From positions 62,001-126,000 of IMG/VR virus record IMGVR_UViG_3300009703_004110: DNA of 64,000 nucleotides; one strand, written 5' to 3'. A program made the position numbers and the translations under genes. Below, piece by piece: positions 11,375 to 24,751 of this stretch (its first letter is position 1; each line of letters starts with the position of its first letter). The notes beneath the pieces were generated by a model. The model searched no databases and was not told the origin of the DNA. It worked only from the letters and a program-made list of their open reading frames with translations.

Positions 11375-12167
11375 AGCCAAACTCACGCAGTCTGAGCCAT
11401 TCATCACCGTACTTCCAGTCTATTCCTCGTTTTGGTTCCCATATATCAAACCAAGGACCACCATTAGTGAAGTGAACGTTCTTAGCTTCTAAGCTTTCGG
11501 GAGAATGGCCTGGTAACCAATTCCACTCCTCTGGCAATTCACCTATATCTTTATCCTCTAGCCACTTCAGATTATGTAACCAAGTTCCTGGCTTAGTGCT
11601 AACATCAGCCGCTGTTAAATTGTGATGAGCCTGATGGCCGCAATTCCAGAGCATAACACTGGACCAGTTTTTTCTACTATAAAATGTTTGTGGGCATCCG
11701 TAGAGCTTGACAGCAACTTTGCCACCATCCTCAAACTGATGCTTAACACACTGTAAAGCTGGCGCGTCTGCAGTAGCGTAGCGATCAAATATCTCACACG
11801 GGTCGCTGCGAAAATACATATCGTTATCCATAAACAAAGCAAACCCTTCGTGCTGGTTTAAAAAAGGAACTAAAAATCTTGAAAAACTGAACTCTGTCGA
11901 ATACGGCTTACCATCGAACCTGTCTACCATATGGTCTACTTTATTTTGCCCCCATACAGTGGATTCTACATGCGGAACCCTAAAATATAATCCACTTCTT
12001 CTTAAGCTTGTCTGATTTAAGGTCACAATATTAAGCGGCCTAGAGGCGTGTCTTAGGATTGAGTCTGTTAAAACTTCAGAGGCATGATGATCTCTTGGGT
12101 CATAACCGATGTATATTGTATCTAGCTTTCTAACTTCTTTATCATTCTGATTAATGACTTTTCTCAT
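11364..12167 (-). CDS. GT8-like glycosyltransferase
   Basis: IYIGYDPRD, STEFSFSRFLVP, ALFMDNDMYF, RKNWSSVMLWNCGH, WNWL, HFTNGGPW. Confidence 0.75.
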   Translation of the reverse strand: MRKVINQNDKEVRKLDTIYIGYDPRDHHASEVLTDSILRHASRPLNIVTLNQTSLRRSGLYFRVPHVESTVWGQNKVDHMVDRFDGKPYSTEFSFSRFLVPFLNQHEGFALFMDNDMYFRSDPCEIFDRYATADAPALQCVKHQFEDGGKVAVKLYGCPQTFYSRKNWSSVMLWNCGHQAHHNLTAADVSTKPGTWLHNLKWLEDKDIGELPEEWNWLPGHSPESLEAKNVHFTNGGPWFDIWEPKRGIDWKYGDEWLRLREFGYGE

Positions 12168-12954: not shown

Positions 12955-12955
12955 C

Positions 12956-13426
12956 TTAACTCCTAGATTTAGCAACCAGTTCACTACTGCTCTGAACCTT
13001 TCCACCGCCAACATTCCACAACATGTAGATGCCAAGTTCATTACAGACCTTTACTTCTGGTACGTTATCAGATTTTCTGTCGCCACCATTGGCAAAGAAA
13101 TCTGGACATAGTCTTCTTAGTGCTTCACAAACTGAACCATCCGAGTCATCCACATGGCTCACATGCACTACGCCTCTTATCGCAGATAATATTTCTGCTC
13201 TCTCCTCAAAAGACATAAATACATAACCTTTCTTTCTCATTAGCCACTCATCACTGTTGGCCACAACAATAACTTCCTTGCCACCCTTAGCGGCATCTAA
13301 AATCATTTGAACGTGGCCAACGTGTATTGGGTCAAATCCACCGGAAACAACTACCGAACTCTGTTCGTACCCGTCATAAGTCTTTTTGGTTTCCCAACTT
13401 CCATCATCATTTAACGGCATCATCAT
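12956..13426 (-). CDS. HxGH-family cytidylyl/adenylyltransferase (TagD / RfaE domain II-like)
   Basis: VVVSGGFDPIHVGH, VVANSDEWL.RKKG, FANGGDR, GGGKVQSSS. Confidence 0.8.
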   Translation of the reverse strand: MMMPLNDDGSWETKKTYDGYEQSSVVVSGGFDPIHVGHVQMILDAAKGGKEVIVVANSDEWLMRKKGYVFMSFEERAEILSAIRGVVHVSHVDDSDGSVCEALRRLCPDFFANGGDRKSDNVPEVKVCNELGIYMLWNVGGGKVQSSSELVAKSRS

Positions 13427-14000
13427 CTCCTCTGGCTACTTGCCCTAAGTATCCACCATGATGTCTCTTAGCGTACTCCTCTTTCGTAAATTTTTTCTTT
13501 TCCATCACGACCATAGCTAGTACGTCGCCAATAACTAACATCACTGTTGTTGAGCATGTTGGGGCCATGCCTAGTGGGCATACCTCCGGGTATCCTCCGG
13601 TTTCAATCACTACATCAGATTGTACTGCCAGCGGCGCATCTTTATTAGCAGTGACTGTGATTAGCTTTAAATCACACAGTTGCTTTGCCAAATAAGTAGA
13701 CTCAATAATCTCTCGTGTCTTGCCAGAGTTAGAAAAAGCAATCATTAGATCGCCCTCTGCTACCATTCCAAGATCACCATGTTGAGCTTCGCACGGATGA
13801 AGATAAAAGGCAGGCGTCCCTGTTGACGCGAAAGTAGCGGACACTTTTCTAGCTATTAGCCCCGCCTTCCCCATTCCTATAAAGACAAGCTTGCCTTTAC
13901 ACTTTAGTATCTCCTCTACTGCTTCATCAATTCCGGTCAAAGGAATGGCTTTAATTGCATTAACCTCTTCCTTCAGCACCTCTTTAGCTGTTCTTCGCAT
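13407..14000 (-). CDS. kdsD: Arabinose-5-phosphate isomerase, SIS domain only (no CBS pair)
   Basis: FIGMGKAGLIARKVSATFASTGTPAFYLHPCEAQHGDLG; SNSGKT.E; APT.STT; HHGGYLG; ends at 197 aa. Confidence 0.85.
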   Translation of the reverse strand: MRRTAKEVLKEEVNAIKAIPLTGIDEAVEEILKCKGKLVFIGMGKAGLIARKVSATFASTGTPAFYLHPCEAQHGDLGMVAEGDLMIAFSNSGKTREIIESTYLAKQLCDLKLITVTANKDAPLAVQSDVVIETGGYPEVCPLGMAPTCSTTVMLVIGDVLAMVVMEKKKFTKEEYAKRHHGGYLGQVARGDDDAVK

Positions 14001-14748
14001 CTATCATACCTCGCATTATTGCTCTTGCTTTATCTAAGTCTTTCTGTGTGTCAACTGAAAATTTCTCAGAATCATTACAGTTGGTTGTTCTTATAGTAAT
14101 CTTATTAAATAGCCAAGTAAGCTGCTCTAATTTTTCAGTTTCTTCTAGATATGACATTGGTAAATTTTTAATGATATCTAAAGTAGGACGTGTAAAGCCA
14201 TATGTGCCTACATGTTGGGCATACGGATTATATAGTACCCGATCTCGGCAATGCGGTATTGGACTTCTGCTAAAATATATTGCATCATTATTCTTATCTA
14301 GAACTACTTTAGCTATAGTATCATCGTTTATAGCGTTTTCTGATAGCTCTGTTACAAGAGTAGTGACGGCTATTTCTTTTGGGTCTAAAGATCGCAAGAA
14401 GTCTACTGAATCTTGTACAATTTTTAATGATATTAGAGGCTGGTCTCCTTGGATGTTCAAAAAGTAATCATATCCTGGGTATAATTCCGCCACTTCTGCG
14501 ACCCGTAAAGTGCCGGATATATGATCATGACTTGTCATTACTACAGTTCCACCAAATCCCTCTACTGCTTTAAAAATTCTGATATCATCGGTTGCAACCA
14601 TAGTCGTTGGCAGAATTTTAATTACTCGCTCATAAACCCATTGTATCATAGGCCTGCCACAAATATCCGCCAGAGGCTTCCCTGGCAGCCTGCTAGAATC
14701 ATATCTAGCAGGAATTACTCCAAGCACATTTGCTGACATATTACTCAT
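13984..14748 (-). CDS. kdsB: CMP-Kdo synthetase (3-deoxy-manno-octulosonate cytidylyltransferase)
   Basis: IPARYDSSRLPGKPLADI.G.PMIQWV, SGT.RVAEV, NIQGDQP, YFSRSPIP, H.G.Y, E.LEQL.WL, SVDT..DL. Confidence 0.92.
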   Translation of the reverse strand: MSNMSANVLGVIPARYDSSRLPGKPLADICGRPMIQWVYERVIKILPTTMVATDDIRIFKAVEGFGGTVVMTSHDHISGTLRVAEVAELYPGYDYFLNIQGDQPLISLKIVQDSVDFLRSLDPKEIAVTTLVTELSENAINDDTIAKVVLDKNNDAIYFSRSPIPHCRDRVLYNPYAQHVGTYGFTRPTLDIIKNLPMSYLEETEKLEQLTWLFNKITIRTTNCNDSEKFSVDTQKDLDKARAIMRGMIDAKNS

Positions 14749-15706
14749 CTTCTTCACACATCCAAAATGGGTTCATTCTAAATAGCCCGGTCATTGCGTC
14801 TCTGACAGTTCCGTCCTTCGCAATACCTCTGGCATGGAAGCCCCTTGTGTTAACAATAACCAAAGAATTCCCATCAATAGCCTCTGCGGTTATGGAATTT
14901 CTATAGCCCATTGCCTTGATTTCTTTAGCAGAAGCTCTAAAAGACCCCTCTCTAGTTCCCTTGTTTGATGATTTATATGCATCAATAATTAATTTCTGAG
15001 ACCACGCCAATCTTCCTGGAATACTTCTATGAGATCCTTTAACGTATCTTGTTGGTCCTTGCTCTAAAGTCATTGGGGCTAAATAAAACCAAAATTTAAT
15101 AGTTGGATGGAAAGTATCTTCGTGTATTTGCTTTTGTATATCATTATCTCTATGAACTAAGCGCTCTACTCGCTTGTCATGGAATACGAAGTCGTCTCGT
15201 CCATTGGCCATTCTAACTAGATCAATTAACTCTGGATTATTAAAGAAGCTGAAAAGCTCTTCGTGATGTTTATTTAATCGCAAATATGAGTGCTTCCAGT
15301 TATCAAATCTATCCCTTGGTTGCTCCGCTATTAATCTATAAAATTTCTTTCTAATTCTCTTAAGCTCTTTGCCTTTAATAAAGTCAGGAATTATAACCAT
15401 CCCATCTTCATAAAAGGACCTGATGTAATCATTATGTAGATTGTATGTCATCTCTCGATCATATATAGCTTCCGCCAGGACTACTCTGAAAATATAGAGC
15501 CCCTTTCTATTAAGCTCTTCATCTTTTAAAACTGGAAAGCGTCGAAATTTTTTCTCCTTACTGAAAATCACACTTCTCTCCGCTTCCGGCAGTGAATATA
15601 TAATATCTAGTATTCCAGAGAAATCTTTTTCTCCAAATACTGAGCAAACCTCCTCTTCGTCATATTCATATTCACTAAGAACTCTTTCTATATATTCTCT
15701 CCTCAT
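14741..15706 (-). CDS. Fe(II)/2-oxoglutarate dioxygenase, PhyH-like
   Basis: IHEDTF (HxD), FWFYL, GPTRYVKGSH, distal NTRGFHARG. Confidence 0.75.
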   Translation of the reverse strand: MRREYIERVLSEYEYDEEEVCSVFGEKDFSGILDIIYSLPEAERSVIFSKEKKFRRFPVLKDEELNRKGLYIFRVVLAEAIYDREMTYNLHNDYIRSFYEDGMVIIPDFIKGKELKRIRKKFYRLIAEQPRDRFDNWKHSYLRLNKHHEELFSFFNNPELIDLVRMANGRDDFVFHDKRVERLVHRDNDIQKQIHEDTFHPTIKFWFYLAPMTLEQGPTRYVKGSHRSIPGRLAWSQKLIIDAYKSSNKGTREGSFRASAKEIKAMGYRNSITAEAIDGNSLVIVNTRGFHARGIAKDGTVRDAMTGLFRMNPFWMCEEDE

Positions 15707-15712
15707 AAAACC

Positions 15713-16501
15713 TCACAAAATTTCTATATTTTTATTACATTCAGACAGCCACCACGCCACTTCTGTAAAGGTGCTCATATACGTACCTAATATAGTCTTG
15801 CCCTTTGCCAATAAGTATAGGTCAATAATGTCATCTTCAATAGTTCTATCTTCTGAGTTGGAGTAGACTATTATTCTATCTCCAAAAACTTCTTCTAGTC
15901 GCCTTATATGACTTAATGAATCTGAGGCCACAAAGAATGTAACGCTCGAATCAAACTGCTTCATTCTTGAAATAAATTTATTGATATCAAAGTTTTTTCT
16001 TCTTGAGCTTCCGGCTATATCATACCACGTTCTCATATGTACTGAGATGGTCTCTTTATCAAAGCGCCGCTTATAGAATTTGATTATCTTTCTTTGATAT
16101 CTTCTTTTTAATTTTATTTGTTTAAAAATATCAATATAGACATCTTGAACTGATTTCGGTATCCTGTTGTATTCTAGATCAATATTTCTTCCGCTCTTAT
16201 TTCCTTTTTTATCTGAGAACTTTGAAAATCCGACTGGCAAATCATCATCATCCATAATAGCCAGCCTCCATGAGTCATAAAATTTAGATCTCTTCGGAAA
16301 CGGCTCTGTAACCTCAATGTCATTTTCAAAAAAGTCTGAAAATCTACTTTCTGGCCTATGAGGTGTTCTGCCGTTCTTGTCAATATAGATATTGATGATT
16401 GGTCTCCAAAAAATACCATGACTTTTCGGCTCCAATCTCATACATGAAGCTAGGGCCTTTAATCTGTTCGCAATACCTGCATCTTCTGACGCTATTATCA
16501 T
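15713..16501 (-). CDS. NodZ/GT23/O-fucosyltransferase-like glycosyltransferase
   Basis: GIANRL, SVHMRT, FFVASDS, IDLYLLAK...GTYMSTF. Start revised to ATG 16501. Confidence 0.65.
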   Translation of the reverse strand: MIIASEDAGIANRLKALASCMRLEPKSHGIFWRPIINIYIDKNGRTPHRPESRFSDFFENDIEVTEPFPKRSKFYDSWRLAIMDDDDLPVGFSKFSDKKGNKSGRNIDLEYNRIPKSVQDVYIDIFKQIKLKRRYQRKIIKFYKRRFDKETISVHMRTWYDIAGSSRRKNFDINKFISRMKQFDSSVTFFVASDSLSHIRRLEEVFGDRIIVYSNSEDRTIEDDIIDLYLLAKGKTILGTYMSTFTEVAWWLSECNKNIEIL

Positions 16502-16502
16502 T

Positions 16503-17162
16503 TTACACCTGAAAAATTTTATAACTTGAGATATCTTTATACTTGTATGAACCACCACAGTCCTCGTTAACCTCTGGTAACGAATCCAAAAGAACGATGC
16601 CTCGTGCGGCCTGCTCTGGCGGCATATACATGTTCCAACCGAGGACTGTTAGCTCTTCCATACTATCATGCGGTATTCTTTCGTCTCTTCCTTCGTATCT
16701 GGCTTGTTTGAACCACTTCACAGCATCAGCATCATCGGTCAAAATCATCCCGCCCTTTGTTATTGGTAGAATTTTCTTAATATGAAAAGATAGGCATTGA
16801 TATGTGCCTGGGATGTACATTCCTTTAGTAAACCTTGTTGCCGAATCAATAATTGGATATGGGTTTAGTTGATATAAGCCCCACCATTCTAAATCTGTAA
16901 ACTTTGGCTTGCAGCCGGTATGAATGATTACCCCTGGAACAGAAACGTATGTCTTACCCGGCACCTCTATTTCTCCAGATGCACCAAGATATTTCATTGA
17001 TAAAAATAGGGCGTTAGTGCAACTATCGACTGATACTGCATATTTGCTTCCGGCATATGCCGCTACTTTCTGTTCAAAGATATCAACTATATCCCAAGGA
17101 TCATTAACTTCATAGCCTTCTTTGAGCAAAATTTCTTTTGCTACTTCTAAATCAGAATACAT
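16503..17162 (-). CDS. Short (219 aa) DegT/DnrJ/EryC1/StrS-family PLP enzyme
   Basis: FEQKVAAYAGSKYAVSVDSCTNALFL, IIDSA, SFHIKKILPITKGGMIL, GWNMYM; lacks the usual C-terminal domain. Confidence 0.75.
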   Translation of the reverse strand: MYSDLEVAKEILLKEGYEVNDPWDIVDIFEQKVAAYAGSKYAVSVDSCTNALFLSMKYLGASGEIEVPGKTYVSVPGVIIHTGCKPKFTDLEWWGLYQLNPYPIIDSATRFTKGMYIPGTYQCLSFHIKKILPITKGGMILTDDADAVKWFKQARYEGRDERIPHDSMEELTVLGWNMYMPPEQAARGIVLLDSLPEVNEDCGGSYKYKDISSYKIFQV

Positions 17163-17725
17163 TATAACTTCTCCGAAAACATATGACCTTCAATCGTGGT
17201 AAATTCTAATATATCGAGTGGAAATACTTTAGGATCCAAATCCTTAAAGAGTGTATTTTTGAAGCCCATACTTTTCATATAATCCTCTGATTTAAATTTT
17301 GCTCTATTGAAATTATTTCTGCTCAACATGACGCCGCCCTTGATCATATTTCTAGCTGCCCACTTTTGTACATGTATTTTTAAGTCAGGAGTTGTTGGAA
17401 AACTTCCCATATCGTTGTGACAAAACGCAATAGGAAGGTCGTCTTCATCACTCAGTAGGTTACAGTCTTTTGTAATTACTCGGTCGTGCTCCATTGGATT
17501 AAATAAGTCGTATCCTATGCACCTTTCTCTTCCATACATTTCGCATAAAAGGTCTAATGACACGCATCTATTGCTTCCAAGCAAAACTATATACCCGGCA
17601 TCTGGTATTTCCAATTTCGAGACCAGCCTGTCTATTATCTTATAACCGTAATATTCTTTGCCATAATTACCTACTACGGCATGCTCCTCTGGAGAATCAA
17701 ACCAATACTTATATTCTTTATTCAT
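17162..17725 (-). CDS. Hypothetical protein, possibly methyltransferase-like
   Basis: IVLLGSNR...CIGYDL weakly resembles SAM motif I/II; the coupled ORF boundaries support a real gene. Confidence 0.4.
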   Translation of the reverse strand: MNKEYKYWFDSPEEHAVVGNYGKEYYGYKIIDRLVSKLEIPDAGYIVLLGSNRCVSLDLLCEMYGRERCIGYDLFNPMEHDRVITKDCNLLSDEDDLPIAFCHNDMGSFPTTPDLKIHVQKWAARNMIKGGVMLSRNNFNRAKFKSEDYMKSMGFKNTLFKDLDPKVFPLDILEFTTIEGHMFSEKL

Positions 17726-18383
17726 TTAAATCTCCTAATAAACTGTAATATTCTCCGATTATAAATCTATTTTTCTTTGTAGCTGTAACGGCCGAATATG
17801 TTGGGTCATATTTACTTAATGGTAAGATTCTAAAATCGAAACTAATTCTAGTTGCCCCTGTTTCATTAACTTTATTTCCATGATTACATTTATTTCCATC
17901 AAAGATTAGGCAGTCACCATACTTCATATTAACAGGGCCGAAATCACCAAGACCAGGTGCGCTTTCTACCCACACTGTATTGGTATCAAACGCATTTGTT
18001 ATTGGTATAATAAAATTGATTTCTCCATCTGGATGTAAATGAAGCGCGTCACTATCATGATGCCAAGTTGAAACAGCCTTGTTATTTGGGAATTGTATTC
18101 TATAAGATGGGAACGATTGATATAGAAAGGACTTCTCTGCTGATAAATTAATTATTACTTCTGATACAAACCTTTCATAAGCTTCTCTAATCTCGTTCCA
18201 TCCGGAATTTAATTTCTCATAGAACTTATTATGTAGAATAGAGTGCGTATCATGTCCAATGCCTTTTACGCCATTCTCCTCCGTGAGCTGAGTATGCAAT
18301 GTAGATAAGTCTGAAACTTGATACAAATCAAGAAGAAGTTCTTGAAACTTGTAAATGTTTGTATCGTATTTTATTATCCTCAT
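17718..18383 (-). CDS. Fe(II)/2OG-type oxygenase, StrG-like
   Basis: WHHDSD, HPDGEINFIIPIT, TNTVWVES, FDGNKCNHGNKVN.TG.TRISFDFR. Confidence 0.65.
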   Translation of the reverse strand: MRIIKYDTNIYKFQELLLDLYQVSDLSTLHTQLTEENGVKGIGHDTHSILHNKFYEKLNSGWNEIREAYERFVSEVIINLSAEKSFLYQSFPSYRIQFPNNKAVSTWHHDSDALHLHPDGEINFIIPITNAFDTNTVWVESAPGLGDFGPVNMKYGDCLIFDGNKCNHGNKVNETGATRISFDFRILPLSKYDPTYSAVTATKKNRFIIGEYYSLLGDLNE

Positions 18384-18391
18384 CTTTCTTC

Positions 18392-19339: not shown

Positions 19340-20253
19340 TATACGCCCCTAACATTTGGATAGCTTTCTTTAAACCACTTACATGTTTCGGCCAGACCTT
19401 CACTTAGTTTAGTATATTTAAAGTCAGGATATAACTCCAAGAACTTCGTATTATTAGACGGCTTTCTGTGTTGACCTTTCGGCATAGAAATATCCCATTT
19501 GATTTTTCCATCAAATTCCATCTCCTTCATAATATATCCGGCCACCTCTTTGATGCTGTATTCTTTGGTAAATCCAATGTTTACTGGATTTGAGTCTTCG
19601 TAATTATCTAGCAACCATAGCAGGGACCTTGCCGTGTCTTTAGCATAGGTAAATTCTCTGAGTGGCGTTCCATCGCCCCAAAGGATTATCTCGTCCCTTC
19701 CTTCTAATTTTGCCTCATGAATCTTTCTAATCATAGATGGGATTACGTGACTACATACTTTGTCAAAATTATCATTAGCGCCATATAAGTTATTCGGTAT
19801 TGCAACTGTAAAGTTACACCCCCATTCTTTTCTATATGCTAAAGACTGAATATGCAGCATTCTTTTCGCATAGGCATATCCAAAGTTTGACTCATGTGGA
19901 GGTCCCTCATGAACACTAGTTTCTGTTAAAGGATACGATGCAGCATCCGGATAAATACAGGTGCTCAGAAGTGACAAAACCTTCTCTACTTTTGTTATTC
20001 TAGCTGCTTCCAAAAGATTTGTGTTCATCAAAATGTTATCTCGAAAGAAGGTTCCGACATAATCCATGTTGCCTTTAACGCCACCAACTCTAGCTGCTAA
20101 GTGAATTATTCTTTCGACTTGATTTTCTTCAATCATGGCTACACATTGCTCGAAGCTTGTTAGGTCATAGTCAGATGACCCTACCCTTAAAACATCATAA
20201 TCACCAAAAGCGTATCCCACCATTCCTGTTCCGCCAGTAATAAGAGTTGTCAT
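19339..20253 (-). CDS. fcl: GDP-4-keto-6-deoxymannose epimerase/reductase (Fcl/WcaG; could be ColC)
   Basis: ITGGTGMVG, HLAARVGG, LSTCIYP, YAYAKR, PNNLYG.NDNF, HVIP.MIRK, WGDG.PLREF. Confidence 0.85.
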   Translation of the reverse strand: MTTLITGGTGMVGYAFGDYDVLRVGSSDYDLTSFEQCVAMIEENQVERIIHLAARVGGVKGNMDYVGTFFRDNILMNTNLLEAARITKVEKVLSLLSTCIYPDAASYPLTETSVHEGPPHESNFGYAYAKRMLHIQSLAYRKEWGCNFTVAIPNNLYGANDNFDKVCSHVIPSMIRKIHEAKLEGRDEIILWGDGTPLREFTYAKDTARSLLWLLDNYEDSNPVNIGFTKEYSIKEVAGYIMKEMEFDGKIKWDISMPKGQHRKPSNNTKFLELYPDFKYTKLSEGLAETCKWFKESYPNVRGV

Positions 20254-20254
20254 T

Positions 20255-21418
20255 TTATTCTCCCAAGGTAACTTGGTTTATGATTTCAGACACCATAAAT
20301 ACATCCGCATCAGTTAATGCGTGATGATTTGGAATATAAAATCCATAATCATTTATCAAGTCACAGTTTTTAAGTTCGTTAATTCCGTATTTTTTAATCC
20401 AAAATGGACTTCTACCTATTGAACCAGCAATTAATGGCCTTACTTCTATATTATTGCTTCTTAAGGCAGAAACAATTTTATTTCTCTTTTTAGAGACAAC
20501 CGGATATGCAAAATTAGATACAAAATCACCTGGACGCTCTAACGTCGATAAAAGATTTCCTTTTATTAATCTATTATAAACATAAAAATTACGCCTTCTT
20601 TGTGATTTATATTCAAAAATTTTATCTAGCTGTCTAAGCCCAAGAAAAGCCTGAAGATCTGTTGGTCTCAGATTAAATCCTGGGTAATAAAAAGTATATA
20701 GGCAGTCAAAATCATTAATGCCCCATTCTCCCCTTAGCCTCTGCTGAGTCTCAGTTGATAAATTTCTATCCCATCCATGACTTCTTAGGGAGACCAATAT
20801 TTCATACAGCTCTTCATCATCCGTAGAGATCATCCCGCCTTCAATTGTGCTTATGTGATGGCCATAAAATAATGAGAAAATTGACACCTTTCCGTACGTT
20901 CCCAACTGTACTCCCTGATACTCTGCACCAGTACTCTCTGCCACATCTTCTATCAGGACAACATCATACTCTTTACAAAGCGCCTGGATCTTTTCCATTT
21001 CCGGTACAAGACCTAATACAGAAACCAATATCATTCCTGCCGGCTCATGCTCTATAAATAATTGCTCAAGATGCTCTAAATCTACAGATAGATCTGATAA
21101 ATTGCAATCACATAATATCGGCTCTAATCCTATTTGCATACAACTACTGACATCCGTAACCCATCCAAGACCAGGTACAACTATCTTTTTATTTTTAAAG
21201 TATCCGCCCTCTAGTAGTCCATATAAGCTAAGAAGTATAGCAGAAGAGCCTGAGTTTACAAATACACTATGCTTTACACCTAGTAGTTCAGACCACTTGG
21301 CCTCAAACTCTTCAGTTAACTTATGCATAGTCAAACGAGGAACGGGATCTTGCAATAGCCATGCAGCAAGAGCGTTCGTATCTTCTCGGCTTATTGTATC
21401 GCTTGCAAGTTTAATCAT
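20255..21418 (-). CDS. colD: GDP-4-keto-6-deoxy-D-mannose 3-dehydratase-like PLP enzyme (ColD type)
   Basis: 387 aa; His replaces the Schiff-base Lys in FSLFYGHHISTIEGG; also EDVAESTGA, TDDEELYEILVSLRSHGWDRNL, PGFNLRP, as I recall the ColD/WbdK pattern. Confidence 0.75.
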   Translation of the reverse strand: MIKLASDTISREDTNALAAWLLQDPVPRLTMHKLTEEFEAKWSELLGVKHSVFVNSGSSAILLSLYGLLEGGYFKNKKIVVPGLGWVTDVSSCMQIGLEPILCDCNLSDLSVDLEHLEQLFIEHEPAGMILVSVLGLVPEMEKIQALCKEYDVVLIEDVAESTGAEYQGVQLGTYGKVSIFSLFYGHHISTIEGGMISTDDEELYEILVSLRSHGWDRNLSTETQQRLRGEWGINDFDCLYTFYYPGFNLRPTDLQAFLGLRQLDKIFEYKSQRRRNFYVYNRLIKGNLLSTLERPGDFVSNFAYPVVSKKRNKIVSALRSNNIEVRPLIAGSIGRSPFWIKKYGINELKNCDLINDYGFYIPNHHALTDADVFMVSEIINQVTLGE

Positions 21419-21428
21419 TCAAACTCCT

Positions 21429-22136
21429 TTAAATCCATTTAAAAACATAGTCAAACTCTACGTTTCCAACACATGTTGCGCCCAAATTCTCCAGAAATTT
21501 TCCAGAAGCAAAAGGCTCTTGCTTTATTTTACGCGCCCTTAACTTTTCTTCTGGCAATTGTTCTATCACAATTACTGGCTTACTTATTTTAATAGTTTTT
21601 ATTGCTCCATGTAATACGTCAAGCTCATATCCATCTACATCGATTTTTATATAATCAACATTTCTAAGCTTAAAATGATCTAGTGGCAGAATCGGCATTC
21701 TTCCCTCTAAAATATCTCCACTGTACTTGATTGTTTTGGTAATAGAGTTACCTTGCATTGAGCCTATAAAACCATAATGTGCGCCTAAGCCACATGGATA
21801 TATTGTCACATTCGAAGTATCTACATTTTTTGCCAATAATGGCAGCCACTTCCATCTTGGTTCAAATGCAAAGACATGATCAAATTCTTGTCCAAGGTGT
21901 CTGCACCACTCTCCAAATCTGGCTCCAATGTCCAGCGCTATTCCTCTGCCTTCACAATGATCCAGACTAAGCTGCCTTTGCTTTATTTGACCGGGACCCC
22001 TACAGACGTCTGCCTTAATATTCGTCTTTTTAAGATAGGCCGATTGCTTGTAAAGATCTTGCTTGGTGATGATCTGATCTCTCATATAAGTATAAGATCC
22101 GAGATCTTCTATCGTATAGGGATTCACATTAAACAT
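21429..22136 (-). CDS. FkbM-family methyltransferase
   Basis: ALDIGARFGEW, VFAFEP, LDHFKL.NVDYIKIDVDGYE..VLHGA. Confidence 0.8.
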   Translation of the reverse strand: MFNVNPYTIEDLGSYTYMRDQIITKQDLYKQSAYLKKTNIKADVCRGPGQIKQRQLSLDHCEGRGIALDIGARFGEWCRHLGQEFDHVFAFEPRWKWLPLLAKNVDTSNVTIYPCGLGAHYGFIGSMQGNSITKTIKYSGDILEGRMPILPLDHFKLRNVDYIKIDVDGYELDVLHGAIKTIKISKPVIVIEQLPEEKLRARKIKQEPFASGKFLENLGATCVGNVEFDYVFKWI

Positions 22137-22909
22137 TATTGTAATTGACCTCTTATCTTGAGAGCTTGTACCAAGATACCTTCTAGTCTATCAAGCTGCA
22201 ATTGTGTTGCTGAATCACTGCCTGCTGAAGCCGGATCTGGATGTGTTTCGATAAACAATCCATCAACTCCAACTGCTACTGCCGCATTAACCATTGTGCC
22301 TATCATAGTCGGATCACCACCAGTTACGCCATGCGTCTGATTAGGCATCTGAAGGCAATGAGTGCAATCCATAATTACTGGAGCAAACTTTTGCATCCTT
22401 GGGATAGAAGTAAAGTCTACGATTAAATTGCTATACCCAAATGTCGTTCCTCGTTCAGTCAAGAAGACTTGTTCATTTCCAGTAGAACGTACCTTTTCTG
22501 CTGCAAATCCCATCATTTCTGGAGAGACAAATTGACCCTTCTTTACGTTGACCGGAAGGCCCGTCTCTCCTGCCGCAATTAACAGGGCGGTCTGCCTACA
22601 TAGAAAGGCCGGGATTTGAAGGTGGGTCACGTACGGAGCTACTAGGGCTGCTTCATGACTCTCGTGTATGTCTGTGATTACAGGCACATCATATGTATCA
22701 CGAATTTCTTTCAAAATGCCCAGCGCCTCTTGTTGATCGATTCCCGTAAATGAAGTTAGTCGCGTACGATTCGCCTTCGCCCATGATGCCTTAAAGATAT
22801 AATCTATCCCAAGCCTATCCGTCATCTCCTTAACTGCCTCAACAACTTGAAACGGTGTTTTTCTGTTTTCAATTGCGCAAGGTCCGGCCATCAATATTAA
22901 CTTCTTCAT
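22136..22909 (-). CDS. kdsA: Kdo-8-phosphate synthase
   Basis: AGPCAIE, FKASWAKANRT, TDIHE, QIPAFLCRQT, VNVKKGQF, ERGTTFGY, DCTH, FIETHPDP..A.SD. Confidence 0.95.
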   Translation of the reverse strand: MKKLILMAGPCAIENRKTPFQVVEAVKEMTDRLGIDYIFKASWAKANRTRLTSFTGIDQQEALGILKEIRDTYDVPVITDIHESHEAALVAPYVTHLQIPAFLCRQTALLIAAGETGLPVNVKKGQFVSPEMMGFAAEKVRSTGNEQVFLTERGTTFGYSNLIVDFTSIPRMQKFAPVIMDCTHCLQMPNQTHGVTGGDPTMIGTMVNAAVAVGVDGLFIETHPDPASAGSDSATQLQLDRLEGILVQALKIRGQLQ

Positions 22910-23574
22910 TTGTCTCTCCTGGCAAGTAATGCCTCAATTATTATTAGGTCATCTGGCACATCAACTTGAAAGCTTTCGGATGGGTACATTTCATAAACCC
23001 CTACTTTTCCAGATACGCGAACTTTATTTTTAAGCAATAGCTCTTTGGATGTAATATAGAATGCGCCATTTTCTTGGCAGCTTAAAGAAACTATTACATC
23101 TTGTCGTCTCGGCCTGTTATCTAGGGTCCATCCGTCCGGAGCCCATCCGTCCTCACTTATTTCCCATTGCGCAGGCCAATGCATTTTTGTGCCAGAGAAT
23201 ATAGAGTCTAACTTTGCATCTTTTAAAACTCTGAGTCCTTCGTTAATATCTTTTGAACGTAAAAGCGGAGATGTAGGTTGTATAAAAACTAGCTTATCAA
23301 AATCTATATTCTCTGCAAAATGAAGTAATGCACTTTCTGATGTAGACGTATCTTTTGCTAATTTTGGTGGCCTCATCAATACCATGGCCCCCCATGCTTC
23401 TGCCACCATAGCTATCTCTTCATCATCAGTACTTACCCAAGTTTCATCTACGTTTGACATAATTGCCGCTTCAATAGTGTAAGCTAACATGGGCTTGCCT
23501 CTAAGCTTCATTATATTTTTTCCAGGGATGCCTTTGCTCCCTCCTCTTGCCAAAATTACTGCTACAGTTTTCAT
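22906..23574 (-). CDS. neuA: CMP-N-acylneuraminate (nonulosonate) cytidylyltransferase
   Basis: ILARGGSKGIPGKNI, VSTDD, RP..LA.D, QPTSPL, RPRRQD, ENGAFY, VD.PDD. Confidence 0.9.
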   Translation of the reverse strand: MKTVAVILARGGSKGIPGKNIMKLRGKPMLAYTIEAAIMSNVDETWVSTDDEEIAMVAEAWGAMVLMRPPKLAKDTSTSESALLHFAENIDFDKLVFIQPTSPLLRSKDINEGLRVLKDAKLDSIFSGTKMHWPAQWEISEDGWAPDGWTLDNRPRRQDVIVSLSCQENGAFYITSKELLLKNKVRVSGKVGVYEMYPSESFQVDVPDDLIIIEALLARRDK

Positions 23575-24428
23575 ACACCACCTCTAAATTTAATTCGTTG
23601 CTCTATCTCTACGTCTAAGATTTCTTTATCTTTATATCTCAAGGCCTGCTCCATTCCTTTGACGTCGCGAACCAACTTTCGTAGGCCATCAGGCTCTAGA
23701 GATGCCGCATGATCTGTACCTTTCCACGTTCTATCCATAGTAAAGTGCCTTTCTATATATTCCGCTCCGAGAGCAACAGCCCCCATATCCATTGCGATTC
23801 CAAGATGATGACCAGAGAACCCAACGCCCTTTACTGTCTTACCCCAAATGTCTTTTAGCCTCTTAATTTCTAGCAGGCATAAGTCGCCATGAGATACTGG
23901 GTATCCAGAGGTGCAACTGTAAATAACCAAATCCTTGGCCCTGTCTTCATCTACAAATAATTTTAGCAGGGTCTTCTCTTCCGCCTTTGTTGTCATTCCA
24001 AGAGACAAATGAATCTCTCCTTCGTAATTTTCAATAAGCCAGCTTATCATGTCATACTTATTATTCATTGGCGATGGAATTTTAATCTTTTTAGGCTTTA
24101 GTGAGGCAATCTCCTGCGCAGAGGTCATATCCCATACTGAACAAGAATATTCAATATTGTGCTTCTCGCAGTAGGCCAGAAGCTCCTTATGGTCTTCAAG
24201 GCTTAGCTCTAAGAAATCTCTATGTGCGCCGTATGACGGACCATACGAATTCCACGGAGAAGGGTGTGGAGCGTGATATTCTTCATCTGTAAGCAGCTCC
24301 TTGACTGTTCTCTTTTGAAGCTTAACTACGTTTACTCCGGCATAATATTTTGCTTGATAAATAAGCTTCTTGGCTATTTCAAGTTGACCTTTATGGTTAC
24401 AACCTATTTCTGCTATAACTTGAACCAT
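23571..24428 (-). CDS. neuB: NeuB-family nonulosonate synthase lacking the C-terminal antifreeze/SAF domain
   Basis: IAEIGCNHKG, VKLQKR, KIPS, SLGMT, CTSGYP, GFSGHH, IERHFT.DR...GTDH.ASLEP; 285 aa. Confidence 0.9.
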   Translation of the reverse strand: MVQVIAEIGCNHKGQLEIAKKLIYQAKYYAGVNVVKLQKRTVKELLTDEEYHAPHPSPWNSYGPSYGAHRDFLELSLEDHKELLAYCEKHNIEYSCSVWDMTSAQEIASLKPKKIKIPSPMNNKYDMISWLIENYEGEIHLSLGMTTKAEEKTLLKLFVDEDRAKDLVIYSCTSGYPVSHGDLCLLEIKRLKDIWGKTVKGVGFSGHHLGIAMDMGAVALGAEYIERHFTMDRTWKGTDHAASLEPDGLRKLVRDVKGMEQALRYKDKEILDVEIEQRIKFRGGV

Positions 24429-24751
24429 TAGTCCTCCATTTTCTCAATACGCTTAAGAAGATCGTCTTCTCGTCCATCTGTCCAATGAAATCCACGATCG
24501 TCTACAAATAGATGTACAGATATCTTGTTTAAAACAAGGCCATGATATTTCGCTCCTGCTTCTTCCAACACTTCAGTCGTGTACTTAAAGTGCTTAAAAT
24601 GTCTCGCAGAGAAGAAGTAAATCTCATGCCCCTCGTCATAAAGCTTATTAACTAGCTCAATCATATGAGGCTTTGGAAAGGAATCTCTATAGTCATTGGC
24701 AGGATTACCTTGGGTAAATACAGTGTCATCTAAATCAAATGCTATCTTCAT
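24428..24751 (-). CDS. Small HAD-superfamily phosphatase
   Basis: FDLDDTV (DxDxT), FSAR, K, VDD motifs in 107 aa. Confidence 0.75.
   Translation of the reverse strand: MKIAFDLDDTVFTQGNPANDYRDSFPKPHMIELVNKLYDEGHEIYFFSARHFKHFKYTTEVLEEAGAKYHGLVLNKISVHLFVDDRGFHWTDGREDDLLKRIEKMED

What the first reader, a model, noticed from the sequence alone, without database searches (positions are those of the whole stretch)
13407..24751. Near-complete viral CMP-Kdo pathway without lipid A genes
Seen: kdsD (SIS-only), kdsB and kdsA, with no canonical KdsC; a 107-aa HAD phosphatase lies two genes upstream of kdsA. No waaA/lpx genes are in the window. Known: Ru5P -> A5P -> Kdo8P -> Kdo -> CMP-Kdo, and CMP-Kdo is short-lived, so it is made near its transferase. 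Inference: the virus makes its own CMP-Kdo for the KpsS-like and/or GT29 enzymes, and the mini-HAD may replace KdsC.
Basis: partly seen in the sequence, partly recalled or inferred. Interest (0 to 1): 0.65.

Follow-up and report, generated by a model that had tools for sequence, protein, structure and literature searches.

The report
Huge-phage CMP-Kdo cassette with mini-phosphatase
A 332-kb uncultured tailed phage carries intact genes for making the bacterial sugar Kdo in activated form, next to a second acidic-sugar pathway, a tiny phosphatase that probably fills the missing Kdo step, and a sialyltransferase-like enzyme, so the phage probably builds its own acidic glycan rather than lipopolysaccharide.

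Summary
On the minus strand lie a SIS-only arabinose-5-phosphate isomerase (13407-14000), KdsB (13984-14757) and a metal-type KdsA (22136-22909). The whole 332-kb phage genome has no match to the KdsC, WaaA, LpxC or LpxB models.

The 107-aa HAD (24428-24751) is real. It sits three genes upstream of kdsA, behind a NeuB-like synthase and a second cytidylyltransferase.

The gene order GT-B protein, mini-HAD, NeuB, CMP-synthetase, KdsA, KdsB, KdsD recurs in eight related huge-phage contigs. A second lineage has HAD-KdsA-SIS-cytidylyltransferase and no NeuB, which supports the HAD as a Kdo-8-P phosphatase.

The HAD is not KdsC-like. Its nearest solved relatives are BT0820 and phage HY126 AfhF, an arabinose-1,5-diphosphate phosphatase.

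A 212-228-aa GT29-like enzyme with all four sialylmotifs lies at the window's left edge. It recurs in this clade and in a NeuB-less phage that has KdsA, KdsB and KdsD. The "KpsS-like" call is only borderline here.

KdsA and KdsD look Bacteroidota-derived. No island protein is predicted to span a membrane, and the island abuts the tail module.

Viral Kdo pathways were already predicted (CroV, Fadolivirus, cyanophage S-SCSM2R), so this is a new variant, shown in silico only.

The parts
1..313 (-). 5' part of the GT29-like (sialyltransferase-family) gene. The full gene is genome 61627-62313 (228 aa from the first ATG, 212 aa as called in public assemblies).
   Evidence: PF00777: 42.4 bits against a cut-off of 23 and 35.6 bits in the genome scan. 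Motifs L (VGNS..G..ID..R.N), S (PSTG...YGF), III (HYY) and VS (H....E) are seen in the sequence and conserved in 21 homologues. The only PDB sequence hits at E <= 0.01 are vertebrate GT29 sialyltransferases.
4677..5540 (-). Weak Capsule_synth (KpsS/KpsC)-like protein. Family membership is unresolved.
   Evidence: PF05159 at 20.8 bits against 20, on residues 207-238 only. None of the 147 homologues carries a precomputed Pfam domain. hhalign against the solid Capsule_synth protein of LR756500.1 is not significant. The Atlas places it nearest viral clusters, one of which is 18% PF05159.
11364..12173 (-). Conserved neighbour of kdsD, GT8-like glycosyltransferase.
   Evidence: 73% identical to the gene that follows KdsD in L002. 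The homologue in L088 carries PF01501.
12151..13426 (-). Phosphomannomutase-type HAD-IIB (12151-13041) and a small nucleotidyltransferase (12956-13426). These are accessories specific to this subclade.
   Evidence: PF03332 at 129.2 bits; PF01467 at 43.5 bits; rfaE domain II model at 60 bits, below its cut-off. No homologue of either gene in the close relative L002/L008; the corresponding stretches of L086 and L088 list no PMM or CTP_transf_like gene after KdsD. Only a 28% PMM match in L038.
13407..14000 (-). kdsD-type arabinose-5-phosphate isomerase: a single SIS domain, no CBS pair.
   Evidence: NF008141 at 176.6 bits over model positions 15-200 of 328; TIGR00393 at 172.6 bits. 3ETN, the single-domain isomerase of B. 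fragilis, at 209.8 bits.
13984..14757 (-). kdsB, CMP-Kdo synthetase.
   Evidence: NF003952 at 256.7 bits against 193; TIGR00466 at 175 bits against 155.2.
14741..22136 (-). Insert between kdsB and kdsA that is absent from the more distant relatives. It holds a PhyH dioxygenase, an O-FucT-like protein, a truncated DegT, a GT10, an NDP-sugar epimerase/dehydratase, a DegT aminotransferase and an FkbM methyltransferase.
   Evidence: Pfam scans. The relatives L002, L086, L088 and L093 have KdsA directly followed by KdsB. L084 shares the insert.
22136..22909 (-). kdsA, Kdo-8-phosphate synthase of the metal-dependent type.
   Evidence: NF003543 at 338.6 bits against 242; TIGR01362 at 328.6 bits against 314. 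C11, H184, E221 and D232 are invariant in 9 phage sequences. From memory, they match the Cys/His/Glu/Asp metal ligands of the Aquifex aeolicus enzyme.
22906..23574 (-). Second CTP_transf_3 cytidylyltransferase (CMP-nonulosonate synthetase-like).
   Evidence: PF02348 at 97.7 bits. The best NCBIfam model is PseF, at 122 bits, below its cut-off of 205.7.
23571..24428 (-). NeuB-family synthase without the C-terminal SAF domain.
   Evidence: PF03102 at 210.7 bits; TIGR03569 at 186.3 bits, below its cut-off of 399.65, covering model positions 2-273 of 329. PDB relatives are PseI and NeuB at about 1e-20.
24428..24751 (-). Capless mini-HAD phosphatase (107 aa), proposed Kdo-8-P (and possibly nonulosonate-9-P) phosphatase.
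   Evidence: D6, D8, T10, S/T48-A49-R50, K76 and D84-D85 are conserved in 32 homologues of 105-116 aa. A profile of the family hits 9IQW (AfhF) at E 1.2e-12 and 1XPJ at 1.8e-05. The AF2 model has pLDDT 93.6. Z is 11.3 to BT0820 (2OBB) and 10.2 to AfhF. Synteny with KdsA.
24748..25767 (-). Conserved GT-B-fold protein 'X', translationally coupled to the HAD. Candidate CMP/CDP-donor transferase or a divergent 2-epimerase.
   Evidence: No Pfam, NCBIfam or PDB sequence hit. AF2 model pLDDT 91.6. Z about 20 to UDP-GlcNAc 2-epimerases and 19.6 to TarL. Only 44 representatives in 1.84 billion proteins. Its distant relatives hit Glyphos_transf, Epimerase_2 and Capsule_synth weakly.
25764..32303 (-). 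Conserved glycosyltransferase block: a GT-B (25764-26774) and four GT4 genes (27642-32303), interrupted by a LAGLIDADG endonuclease gene (26771-27634).
   Evidence: Pfam scans. The same block precedes the HAD in L002, L084, L086, L088, L090, L091, L092 and L093.
33512..62580 (-). Adjacent tail module: 1516-aa and 3215-aa giant proteins, baseplate wedge (48502-51816), gp25-like baseplate protein (51826-52257) and a tape-measure-like 2056-aa protein (54058-60228).
   Evidence: phrog_6 at 148.4 bits and phrog_2669 at 44.3 bits. A cluster of hydrophobic segments at residues 1278-1391 of the 2056-aa protein. In L086 and L088 a 1510-1717-aa protein directly precedes the GT4 block.

Best explanation
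The window lies in an uncultured 332-kb tailed phage with baseplate and tape-measure genes. Its glycan island, at least 33 kb long and continuing beyond the window's left edge, holds a conserved twin cassette for two CMP-activated ulosonic acids.

The Kdo branch most likely runs in the infected cell's cytoplasm as follows:
1. Ribulose-5-P is converted to arabinose-5-P by the single-domain SIS isomerase.
2. Arabinose-5-P plus PEP gives Kdo-8-P, made by the metal-type KdsA.
3. Kdo-8-P is dephosphorylated to Kdo by the 107-aa capless HAD. This is a non-orthologous stand-in for KdsC, drawn from the AfhF/BT0820 mini-HAD group.
4. Kdo is activated to CMP-Kdo by KdsB.

The neighbouring NeuB-like synthase and second cytidylyltransferase make a CMP-nonulosonate in parallel. 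The phage's own CMP-sugar transferases then use these labile donors. The 212-228-aa GT29-like enzyme is the best-typed candidate; the GT-B protein X and the weak Capsule_synth-like protein are further candidates.

Together with about ten further glycosyltransferases, methyltransferases and amino-sugar enzymes, they build an acidic glycan independent of lipid A. No island protein is predicted to span the membrane and the island follows the tail-fibre and baseplate genes, so the acceptor is most likely a soluble one, probably virion proteins.

Shown: gene identities, conservation and synteny. Inferred: every enzymatic step, the HAD's substrate, which transferase takes which donor, and the acceptor.
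For: - Family-level scores for KdsA, KdsB and the KdsD SIS domain, with KdsA's metal ligands invariant.
- Cassette X-HAD-NeuB-CMP synthetase-KdsA-KdsB-KdsD in L002/L008, L086, L088/L089, L090, L091 and L093, and, with the same insert as the window, in L084.
- A second architecture, HAD-KdsA-SIS-cytidylyltransferase, in L003 and a coupled HAD-KdsA pair in L178-L180. No NeuB in the 136 kb held for L003's record.
- HAD catalytic motifs invariant in 32 homologues. Its closest characterised relative is AfhF, a phage phosphatase that, as reported for HY126, removes a terminal phosphate from an arabinose-5-P-derived sugar (PMC13326640).
- No KdsC, WaaA, LpxC or LpxB match in the genome.
- GT29-like enzyme with four conserved sialylmotifs in the clade. 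A GT29-like gene and a solid Capsule_synth gene also lie in the NeuB-less Kdo cluster of LR756500.1.
- No predicted membrane-spanning protein in the island, and the baseplate and tape-measure genes are adjacent.
- Protein sequences are conserved (dN 0.10-0.58) while NG86 dS was undefined in 18 of 19 comparisons, read as saturation.
Against: - No biochemical or expression data. The one public run that holds the stretch is DNA.
- In this window and its closest relatives the HAD adjoins NeuB, not KdsA, so it may serve the nonulosonate branch.
- LR756500.1 has KdsA, KdsB and KdsD but no such HAD in the 31-kb stretch examined and no HAD domain in the ten cluster proteins scanned. From memory, kdsC is dispensable in E. 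coli. A dedicated phosphatase may therefore not be needed.
- BT0820-like bacterial homologues of the HAD are not near Kdo genes within the 1.5 kb examined.
- The GT29-like enzyme's donor could be the nonulosonate rather than Kdo.
- The acceptor rests only on the lack of membrane proteins and on gene position. Peripheral GT4 and KpsS-type enzymes can act on lipid acceptors without membrane helices.
Confidence: 0.6

Rival explanations
1. The mini-HAD belongs to the NeuB branch. The SAF-less NeuB-like synthase would condense PEP with a phosphorylated hexose (Man-6-P or ManNAc-6-P), and the HAD would remove the 9-phosphate, as in the KDN route of Bacteroides thetaiotaomicron or the animal Neu5Ac route. 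Host KdsC or an unspecific phosphatase would dephosphorylate Kdo-8-P. This does not exclude dual use.
For: In eight of ten contexts the HAD is immediately upstream of NeuB, often overlapping it. A phosphomannomutase and a GDP-mannose dehydratase in the window point to a mannose-phosphate supply. The Kdo cluster of LR756500.1 works without this HAD. From memory, KdsC is dispensable in E. coli, and KdsC-family enzymes accept both Kdo-8-P and KDN-9-P.
Against: L003 and L178-L180 have the HAD coupled directly to KdsA, and no NeuB in the 136 kb held for L003's record. Nothing in the sequence shows that this NeuB uses a phosphorylated substrate: its PDB relatives are PseI and NeuB types that use free sugars. 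No sugar kinase was found beside it.
Confidence: 0.25
2. The Kdo genes are auxiliary metabolic genes that top up the host's own CMP-Kdo pool. The host's WaaA and lipopolysaccharide or capsule machinery would use it, either to keep the outer membrane intact or to alter the surface against superinfection. No phage-specific glycan would be involved.
For: This is the usual reading of LPS genes in marine phages (PMC5332604, PMC12801897). KdsA and KdsD look Bacteroidota-derived, so the host probably has a Kdo-containing LPS. The phage has no exporter of its own.
Against: The Kdo genes are embedded in a conserved block with a dozen or so phage glycosyltransferases, a GT29-like enzyme and a second CMP-sugar route. 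That is far more than a precursor boost needs. The block keeps its position beside the tail genes in distant relatives.
Confidence: 0.12
3. The SIS isomerase and the AfhF-like HAD are parts of an arabinose-nucleotide route for DNA hypermodification (arabinosyl-5-hydroxycytosine), as in phages RB69, DLP3 and HY126.
For: A SIS-only arabinose-5-P isomerase plus an AfhF/1XPJ-type mini-HAD is exactly the pair used there (PMC13326640).
Against: No thymidylate-synthase-family gene (the 5-hydroxy-dCMP synthase type) anywhere in the genome. No AfhE-like kinase/pyrophosphorylase domain appeared in the Pfam and NCBIfam scans of the island ORFs, though no dedicated search for AfhE was run. KdsA and KdsB are intact and conserved between the two genes.
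Confidence: 0.03
4. The island is bacterial DNA, either a prophage flank or a chimeric assembly, and not part of a virus.
For: IMG/VR labels the record 'provirus'. The identical HAD also sits on a 420,521-bp contig. The enzymes are of bacterial type.
Against: The same island lies next to the same giant tail-associated genes in independent assemblies from other samples. Baseplate and tape-measure genes follow on the same strand. Base composition is even across the window. The homologue families of the GT-B protein X and of the 4677-5540 protein sit nearest Atlas clusters labelled viral. CheckV completeness is 99%.
Confidence: 0.02

Closest known systems
Predicted Kdo pathway of the giant viruses CroV (crov265-267) and Fadolivirus
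   Same: A virus-encoded route to CMP-Kdo inside a large glycan-gene cluster of bacterial type. It has glycosyltransferases and sugar methyltransferases, and no experimental proof (PMC9614988).
   Different: Those are eukaryote-infecting Nucleocytoviricota with fused bifunctional proteins. In CroV the phosphatase is a domain fused to the isomerase, and the activation step is assigned to a NeuA-like protein. Here the virus is a tailed phage, the genes are separate, KdsB is canonical, the phosphatase candidate is an AfhF-type mini-HAD, and a NeuB branch is linked.
kdsA/kdsB in cyanomyovirus S-SCSM2R and KdsA/NeuA in a Tara environmental viral genome
   Same: Phage-borne Kdo genes among cell-surface glycan genes (PMC12801897, PMC5332604). 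S-SCSM2R's KdsA is 40% identical to the window's.
   Different: Only kdsA and kdsB are reported there, with no isomerase or phosphatase, and they are read as host-surface modification genes. Here three canonical steps plus a phosphatase candidate form a cassette conserved across a huge-phage clade.
AfhF of phage HY126 (PDB 9IQW), RB69 gp51 and DLP3 gp81
   Same: The same mini-HAD group (profile E 1.2e-12; Z 10.2). It is phage-encoded, paired with a SIS-only arabinose-5-P isomerase, and acts on a terminal phosphate of an arabinose-5-P-derived sugar (PMC13326640).
   Different: AfhF feeds UDP-arabinose for DNA modification and works with a kinase/pyrophosphorylase and a ThyA-like hydroxylase. 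No ThyA-family gene is in this genome, and no AfhE-like domain appeared in the island scans. This HAD is 27% identical to AfhF and shorter (107 against 134 aa), and it is linked to KdsA and NeuB.
KdsC / BT1713 (the 8KDOP subfamily of capless HAD phosphatases)
   Same: The proposed job is the same (Kdo-8-P or KDN-9-P phosphatase), as is the general capless HAD design.
   Different: No match to TIGR01670. KdsC structures are absent from the top 50 structural matches. The protein is about 60 residues shorter. This is an analogue by displacement, not a member.
GT29 sialyltransferases of animals and the GT29-like proteins of plants proposed as Kdo/Dha transferases
   Same: The Pfam GT29 match and all four sialylmotifs are present, including the VS-motif His. 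It co-occurs with a Kdo pathway in a phage without NeuB, which fits the plant proposal (the plant proposal is from memory).
   Different: Only 212-228 aa, with no membrane anchor or stem, encoded by a phage and presumably cytoplasmic. Donor and acceptor are unknown.
Group 2 capsule kps/neu loci of E. coli K1 and Neisseria (KpsF, KpsU, KpsS/KpsC, NeuB, NeuA)
   Same: Dedicated paralogues of the isomerase and the CMP-Kdo synthetase are co-located with a nonulosonate route and with Kdo transferases that do not act on lipid A.
   Different: No KpsMT/KpsDE export genes and no predicted membrane-spanning protein. The KpsS/KpsC-type enzyme is only borderline in this window. KdsA itself is included.

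Membership tests
Kdo-8-phosphate synthase (KdsA; NF003543 / TIGR01362) | Whole-protein score above the curated equivalog cut-off | tested here: met
   338.6 bits against 242, and 328.6 bits against 314.
Kdo-8-phosphate synthase (KdsA; NF003543 / TIGR01362) | Active-site signature (KANRS, KKGQF) and the Cys/His/Glu/Asp ligands of the metal-dependent class | tested here: met
   K45-A-N-R-T49, K123-K-G-Q-F127, C11, H184, E221 and D232 are invariant in 9 phage sequences. The assignment to metal ligands follows the A. aeolicus enzyme, from memory.
Kdo-8-phosphate synthase (KdsA; NF003543 / TIGR01362) | Condenses arabinose-5-P with PEP | not testable with these tools
   Needs an enzyme assay.
CMP-Kdo synthetase (KdsB) | Score above the curated cut-off of the KdsB models, and higher than for the PseF/NeuA models | tested here: met
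   NF003952 at 256.7 bits against 193; TIGR00466 at 175 bits against 155.2; PseF only 28.6 bits.
Arabinose-5-phosphate isomerase (KdsD/KpsF/GutQ) | SIS domain of the KpsF/GutQ type | tested here: met
   TIGR00393 at 172.6 bits over model positions 1-151; NF008141 positions 15-200. 3ETN at 209.8 bits.
Arabinose-5-phosphate isomerase (KdsD/KpsF/GutQ) | C-terminal CBS pair of the E. coli-type enzymes | tested here: not met
   The protein ends at 197 aa and scores below the full-length cut-offs. It fits the single-domain class of B. fragilis (3ETN), as do the RB69 and DLP3 isomerases (PMC13326640).
KdsC (8KDOP subfamily, TIGR01670) | Match to the KdsC profile or structure | tested here: not met
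   No match in the genome at E <= 1. KdsC structures are not among the top 50 matches of the HAD model.
AfhF / 1XPJ / BT0820 capless mini-HAD phosphatases | HAD motifs I-IV (DxDxT, S/T, K, DD) in a capless core of about 105-135 aa | tested here: met
   D6, D8, T10, S/T48, K76 and D84-D85 are conserved in 32 sequences of 105-116 aa. The AF2 model has pLDDT 93.6 and no cap.
AfhF / 1XPJ / BT0820 capless mini-HAD phosphatases | Sequence and fold similarity to the solved members | tested here: met
   9IQW at E 1.2e-12 and 1XPJ at 1.8e-05. Z 11.3 to 2OBB, 10.2 to 9IQW and 9.3 to 1XPJ.
AfhF / 1XPJ / BT0820 capless mini-HAD phosphatases | Substrate (Kdo-8-P, nonulosonate-9-P or arabinose-1,5-P2) | not testable with these tools
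   Only synteny bears on it: KdsA is nearby in 10 of 10 contexts and NeuB in 8 of 10.
GT29 sialyltransferase family (PF00777) | Score above the Pfam gathering threshold | tested here: met
   42.4 bits against 23. All 24 homologues carry PF00777.
GT29 sialyltransferase family (PF00777) | Sialylmotifs L, S, III and VS | tested here: met
   VGNS/G..ID/R.N, PS.G...GF, HYY and H....E are invariant or nearly so in 21 sequences. The Pfam alignment itself covers only motif L (model positions 52-110).
GT29 sialyltransferase family (PF00777) | Uses a CMP-activated ulosonic acid donor | not testable with these tools
   Inferred from the family and from co-occurrence with two CMP-sugar routes.
GT107 KpsS/KpsC beta-Kdo transferases (PF05159 Capsule_synth), for the protein at 4677-5540 | Score above the gathering threshold over most of the domain | tested here: inconclusive
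   20.8 bits against 20, on 32 residues, and 19.2 bits in the genome scan. 147 homologues have no Pfam domain. hhalign against a solid member is not significant.
GT107 KpsS/KpsC beta-Kdo transferases (PF05159 Capsule_synth), for the protein at 4677-5540 | HP motif of CMP-donor GT-B enzymes | tested here: inconclusive
   In a weak BLAST alignment (E 0.49), 'KPHP' of the LR756500.1 protein lies opposite 'KPRV' here. The alignment is too weak to decide.
NeuB-type nonulosonate synthase | NeuB catalytic (TIM barrel) domain | tested here: met
   PF03102 at 210.7 bits.
NeuB-type nonulosonate synthase | C-terminal SAF/antifreeze-like domain and an equivalog-level score | tested here: not met
   285 aa, covering model positions 2-273 of 329, at 186.3 bits against 399.65.
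Lipid A / inner-core route (WaaA, LpxC, LpxB) | Presence of any of these genes in the virus | tested here: not met
   No match in 332 kb.

The most novel reading that the evidence does not exclude
A clade of uncultured huge phages, whose Kdo genes look Bacteroidota-derived, decorates its own virions (tail fibres or baseplate) with an acidic glycan containing Kdo and a nonulosonic acid. The glycan would be built wholly by phage enzymes in the cytoplasm. An AfhF-type mini-HAD would have displaced KdsC, and a minimal, soluble GT29-family enzyme would act as a Kdo or nonulosonate transferase. That would be, as far as I found, the first prokaryote-virus GT29 and a bacterial-world counterpart of the proposed plant GT29 Kdo transferases.
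Probability: 0.25. Interest if true: 0.8.

Novelty: new variant of a known kind. Interest (0 to 1): 0.6.

Why it matters
Kdo is regarded as a hallmark of Gram-negative lipopolysaccharide and plant pectin. A conserved, lipid A-independent CMP-Kdo route in huge phages, coupled to a second CMP-sugar route and to the phage's own transferases, would point to three things.

- **Complex acidic glycans made by phages themselves.** These could serve as a virion coat, a receptor mimic or a shield, as giant viruses do.
- **A new solution to the Kdo-8-P phosphatase step.** This step is still unassigned in plants (PMC9614988).
- **A minimal, soluble GT29-family enzyme of about 212 aa.** It would be useful both for understanding the origin of sialyltransferases and as a glyco-engineering tool.

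All of this can be tested with four or five recombinant proteins.

Tried and rejected
- **Known phages.** A megablast of the region against 50,697 phage records found nothing. A baseplate protein search found only distant relatives, the best being Bacillus phage G at 29%. The phage could not be placed in a cultured family.
- **Protein X (24748-25767).** No Pfam, NCBIfam or PDB sequence hit. Fold searches could not separate a 2-epimerase from a TagF-type transferase: Z is about 20 against 19.6. The profile search found only 44 relatives. The distant ones hit Glyphos_transf, Epimerase_2 and Capsule_synth, in most cases near or below the Pfam thresholds. X remains unresolved. It is also unrelated to the 372-aa gene that precedes the HAD in L003.
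- **Protein at 4677-5540.** I could not confirm it as KpsS/KpsC-like.
- **Afh-type DNA arabinosylation.** Considered because of the AfhF match. Rejected for lack of any ThyA-family gene.
- **Heptose (GmhA/GmhB) reading of the SIS and HAD genes.** Rejected: the window's SIS protein matched no gmhA model at E <= 0.001.
- **Bacterial homologues of the HAD.** Found in 19 of 301 Bacteroidota genomes. None has Kdo or NeuB genes within the 1.5 kb examined, so no bacterial precedent for the HAD-KdsA pair was found in that sample.
- **dN/dS.** It could not be quantified for most gene pairs: NG86 returned no dS value in 18 of 19 comparisons, which I read as saturated synonymous sites.
- **Donor of the NeuB-like gene.** Only one weak match (29% identity) in five Bacteroidota genomes. 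Not pursued.
- **Expression.** Only one public run, a DNA run, holds the stretch.
- **Literature.** No listed paper held both a jumbo/huge-phage term and a Kdo term. No paper found with the terms GT29, bacteriophage and sialyltransferase reports a phage-encoded GT29 in its title or abstract.

Full report
**What the window is.** The window is bases 62,001-126,000 of a 332,270-bp IMG/VR virus record. CheckV estimates it 99% complete, and IMG/VR labels it 'provirus'. The genome is 39.7% G+C and about 95% coding, nearly all on one strand, with 25 tRNA genes.

Downstream of the finding, on the same strand, lie a baseplate wedge protein (phrog_6, 148.4 bits) and a gp25-like baseplate protein. A 2056-aa protein there has a tape-measure-like cluster of hydrophobic segments, and there are 1516-aa and 3215-aa giants. 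It is therefore a huge tailed phage. It has no close cultured relative: the best match is Bacillus phage G at 29% identity.

**Checking the observation.** Pfam and NCBIfam scans confirm the three Kdo genes.
- 13407-14000 is a 197-aa SIS-only arabinose-5-phosphate isomerase. It matches KdsD model positions 15-200 of 328 and has no CBS pair. Its best solved relative is the single-domain enzyme of Bacteroides fragilis, 3ETN, at 209.8 bits.
- 13984-14757 is KdsB (256.7 bits against a cut-off of 193).
- 22136-22909 is KdsA (338.6 bits against 242).

KdsA has C11, H184, E221 and D232 invariant across nine phage homologues. From memory, these are the metal ligands of the Aquifex-type, metal-dependent Kdo-8-P synthases.

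The whole genome gives no match to the KdsC model, even at E <= 1. It also gives none to WaaA, LpxC or LpxB.

The 107-aa ORF at 24428-24751 carries all four HAD motifs: DLDDT, SAR, K76 and VDDR. It lies three genes upstream of kdsA, not two. Between them are a NeuB-family synthase without a SAF domain (23571-24428) and a second CTP_transf_3 cytidylyltransferase (22906-23574).

**The surroundings.** The Kdo genes sit in a glycan island that fills window 323-32715. It continues leftwards to about genome position 50.4 kb, interrupted by a 1385-aa protein and a DUF7487 protein.

The island holds the following:
- a GDP-mannose dehydratase, a phosphomannomutase, a UDP-glucose dehydrogenase-like gene and NDP-sugar epimerases;
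- DegT aminotransferases, FkbM and other methyltransferases, and two PhyH-type dioxygenases;
- GT2, GT4 (several), GT8-like and GT10 enzymes;
- a GT29-like gene at the window's left edge.

None of these island proteins has a predicted membrane-spanning segment by a simple hydropathy scan. There is thus no sign of a flippase, polymerase, ABC exporter or polyprenyl-phosphate transferase.

**Related loci.** The HAD family has 32 members at 90% clustering. All are 105-116 aa, all come from metagenomes, and several sit on contigs of 100-420 kb. The catalytic residues are invariant.

Gene maps of eight distinct relatives show one conserved order: four GT4 genes, a GT-B, protein X, the HAD, NeuB, a cytidylyltransferase, KdsA, KdsB, the SIS isomerase, then a GT8-like gene. 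This block usually comes directly after a 1500-1700-aa protein. The relatives are L002/L008, L084, L086, L088/L089, L090, L091 and L093, with L085 partial.

In the window and in L084, a roughly 7.4-kb amino/deoxy-sugar module is inserted between KdsA and KdsB.

A second lineage has a different, compact order: HAD-KdsA-SIS-cytidylyltransferase.
- L003 (a 136-kb record): HAD 60% and KdsA 57% identical to the window's.
- Three Tara or marine contigs, L178-L180: HAD 80% and KdsA about 70% identical to L003's. These short contigs end inside KdsA, so they show only the coupled HAD-KdsA pair.

In these the HAD and KdsA are adjacent, with overlapping stop and start codons in L178-L180. No NeuB is present in the 136 kb held for L003's record.

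Overall, the HAD has KdsA within four genes in 10 of 10 contexts where the contig reaches far enough, and NeuB in 8 of 10.

A third huge phage, LR756500.1 (462 kb), has no NeuB anywhere. It has one same-strand cluster: GT29-like, a GT4 fusion, a solid Capsule_synth (55.7 bits), methyltransferase, sulfotransferase, GT2, pyruvyl transferase, methyltransferase, KdsA, KdsB and a SIS protein with an N-terminal extension.

Between the window and its relatives, nonsynonymous distances are 0.10-0.58. NG86 returned no dS value in 18 of 19 comparisons, which I read as saturated synonymous sites. That pattern indicates long-term purifying selection on all cassette genes.

**What the mini-HAD is.**
- A profile of the family matches PDB 9IQW (E 1.2e-12) and 1XPJ (E 1.8e-05).
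- 9IQW is AfhF of phage HY126, a D-arabinose-1,5-diphosphate phosphatase.
- The AlphaFold model (pLDDT 93.6) is a capless Rossmann-like core.
- Its best structural matches are BT0820 (2OBB; Z 11.3, rmsd 2.7 Å, 99 residues aligned), AfhF (Z 10.2) and 1XPJ (Z 9.3).
- KdsC structures do not appear among the top 50.

So it is a member of the AfhF/BT0820 mini-HAD group, not of the KdsC subfamily.

According to PMC13326640, AfhF-type enzymes in RB69-like phages work with a SIS-only arabinose-5-P isomerase, and AfhF removes a terminal phosphate from an arabinose-5-P-derived sugar. The phosphate-bearing end of Kdo-8-P is the arabinose-5-P moiety itself. Recruiting such an enzyme to Kdo-8-P is therefore chemically plausible. 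This last step is inference.

The DNA-arabinosylation pathway itself is not supported here. The genome has no thymidylate-synthase-family gene, and no AfhE-like kinase/pyrophosphorylase domain appeared in the island scans. No dedicated search for AfhE was run.

**Consumers of CMP-Kdo.**

*The GT29-like protein* (genome 61627-62313; 228 aa from the first ATG, 212 aa as called elsewhere) passes the Pfam threshold (42.4 bits against 23). It shows sialylmotifs L, S, III and VS. These are invariant or nearly so in 21 homologues, all on huge-phage-sized or metagenomic contigs. Its only PDB sequence relatives at E <= 0.01 are vertebrate sialyltransferases.

Its homologue in the NeuB-less LR756500.1 cluster suggests that this enzyme type can use CMP-Kdo, since CMP-Kdo is the only CMP-ulosonate that phage encodes. 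That is an inference.

It belongs to a large viral family without Pfam domains. I could not link it to a solid Capsule_synth member.

*Protein X* (24748-25767) is co-conserved with the HAD, and its stop overlaps the HAD's start. It is a GT-B fold with Z about 20 to UDP-GlcNAc 2-epimerases and 19.6 to the CDP-ribitol polymerase TarL. It has no sequence match to the NeuC or WecB models. Its few distant relatives hit Glyphos_transf, Epimerase_2 and Capsule_synth weakly. It may be a CMP/CDP-donor transferase or a divergent epimerase that feeds NeuB. I could not decide which.

**Origin.** Among the best 80 bacterial KdsA matches from one genome per species, all those at 54% identity or more are Bacteroidota, apart from one MAG labelled Heliobacteriaceae.

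In a quick maximum-likelihood tree, the phage sequences cluster next to the Bacteroidota KdsA sequences. The phage set includes LR756500.1, L003 and the window clade. Both lie inside one clade of 60 sequences with 99% SH-aLRT support.

Two caveats apply: the bacterial sample was chosen by similarity and capped, and the tree is midpoint-rooted.

The single-domain isomerase also matches the Bacteroides type best. A Bacteroidota donor, and perhaps a Bacteroidota host, is therefore likely but not shown.

**How it most likely works.** The chain is ribulose-5-P, arabinose-5-P, Kdo-8-P, Kdo, CMP-Kdo. The enzymes are the SIS isomerase, KdsA, the mini-HAD and KdsB. In parallel, the NeuB-like synthase and the second cytidylyltransferase make a CMP-nonulosonate.

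The GT29-like enzyme, and perhaps X and the 4677-5540 protein, transfer these sugars. The other glycosyltransferases and tailoring enzymes then assemble the glycan.

The acceptor is most likely soluble, plausibly a virion protein, for three reasons. WaaA and lipid A genes are absent. The phage encodes no exporter. And the island keeps its place beside the tail genes in distant relatives. I hold this last part with low confidence.

The main rivals are:
- the HAD serves the NeuB branch (not exclusive with the Kdo role);
- the Kdo genes merely boost the host's LPS precursor pool;
- an Afh-like DNA-modification route;
- a non-viral origin.

**Comparison with what is known.** Viral Kdo pathways have been predicted for CroV and Fadolivirus (PMC9614988). 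kdsA and kdsB were reported in cyanophage S-SCSM2R (PMC12801897). KdsA and NeuA were reported in a Tara viral genome (PMC5332604). None has been tested.

As far as my searches went, three things are new here:
1. a conserved six-gene twin-ulosonate cassette in a clade of huge phages;
2. an AfhF-type mini-HAD in the place of KdsC;
3. a minimal GT29-family enzyme in phages.

I therefore rate it a new variant of a known kind. It is of moderate to good interest and rests entirely on in-silico evidence.

**Limits.** There is no biochemical or expression evidence. Only one public DNA run, described as a subsurface metagenome, holds the stretch.

Noticed in passing
window 1871-2620, 26771-27634, 33186-33590, 38119-38853 (all -): Four homing-endonuclease-type genes lie between glycan and tail genes: NUMOD3+HNH, LAGLIDADG, HNH and LAGLIDADG. 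The one at 26771-27634 splits the otherwise conserved glycosyltransferase block, and relatives lack it there.
   Followed up: partly
genome 258,605-331,451 (outside the window); tRNA at genome 303576-303651: 25 tRNA genes, including one with anticodon CTA (a TAG suppressor, which ARAGORN labels 'Pyl'). In the 395-kb relative, the GT29-like match contains one in-frame TAG. Together these could hint at TAG read-through in this clade. All window genes read normally in code 11.
   Followed up: no
window 16503-17162 (-) and L084 11328-12498: A DegT-family ORF of 219 aa whose best Pfam stretch covers only about the first third of the aminotransferase model lies beside a full-length DegT (20255-21418). 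In relative L084 a DegT is split into 206-aa and 134-aa ORFs. These look like decaying or split paralogues.
   Followed up: no
window 14741-15706 (-) and 17718-18383 (-): PhyH-type Fe(II)/2-oxoglutarate dioxygenases lie inside the sugar module. The first overlaps the start of kdsB by 17 nt. It could be a sugar hydroxylase, by analogy with Kdo hydroxylation to Ko. Untested.
   Followed up: no
window 38855-48502 (-) and 33512-38062 (-): Giant ORFs of 3215 aa and 1516 aa have no PHROG hit and sit between the baseplate genes and the glycan island. The counterpart in relative L088 shows a weak Dockerin_1 hit. They are candidate fibres and possible glycan acceptors.
   Followed up: partly
L001 (LR756500.1) 7528-17966: The Kdo cluster of this 462-kb huge phage also carries a sulfotransferase, a polysaccharide pyruvyl transferase and a solid Capsule_synth protein. 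Its SIS isomerase has an unexplained N-terminal extension of about 210 aa.
   Followed up: partly
window 12151-13426 (-): The ORFs for a eukaryote-type phosphomannomutase and an rfaE-domain-II-like nucleotidyltransferase overlap by 86 nt next to kdsD. No homologue of either was found in the close relative L002/L008. The sugar nucleotide they would make is unknown.
   Followed up: no
whole record: IMG/VR calls the 332-kb record a provirus, and the identical HAD protein is on a 420,521-bp contig elsewhere. The one public run holding the stretch is labelled a subsurface metagenome, while several relatives come from Tara Oceans and other marine metagenomes. Integration status and habitat are unclear.
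   Followed up: no
L182-L193 (Bacteroidota genomes): BT0820-like homologues of the mini-HAD (open frames of 123-207 aa) occur in 19 of 301 sampled Bacteroidota genomes. The 12 loci fetched show no Kdo or NeuB genes within 1.5 kb. Their role is unknown.
   Followed up: partly
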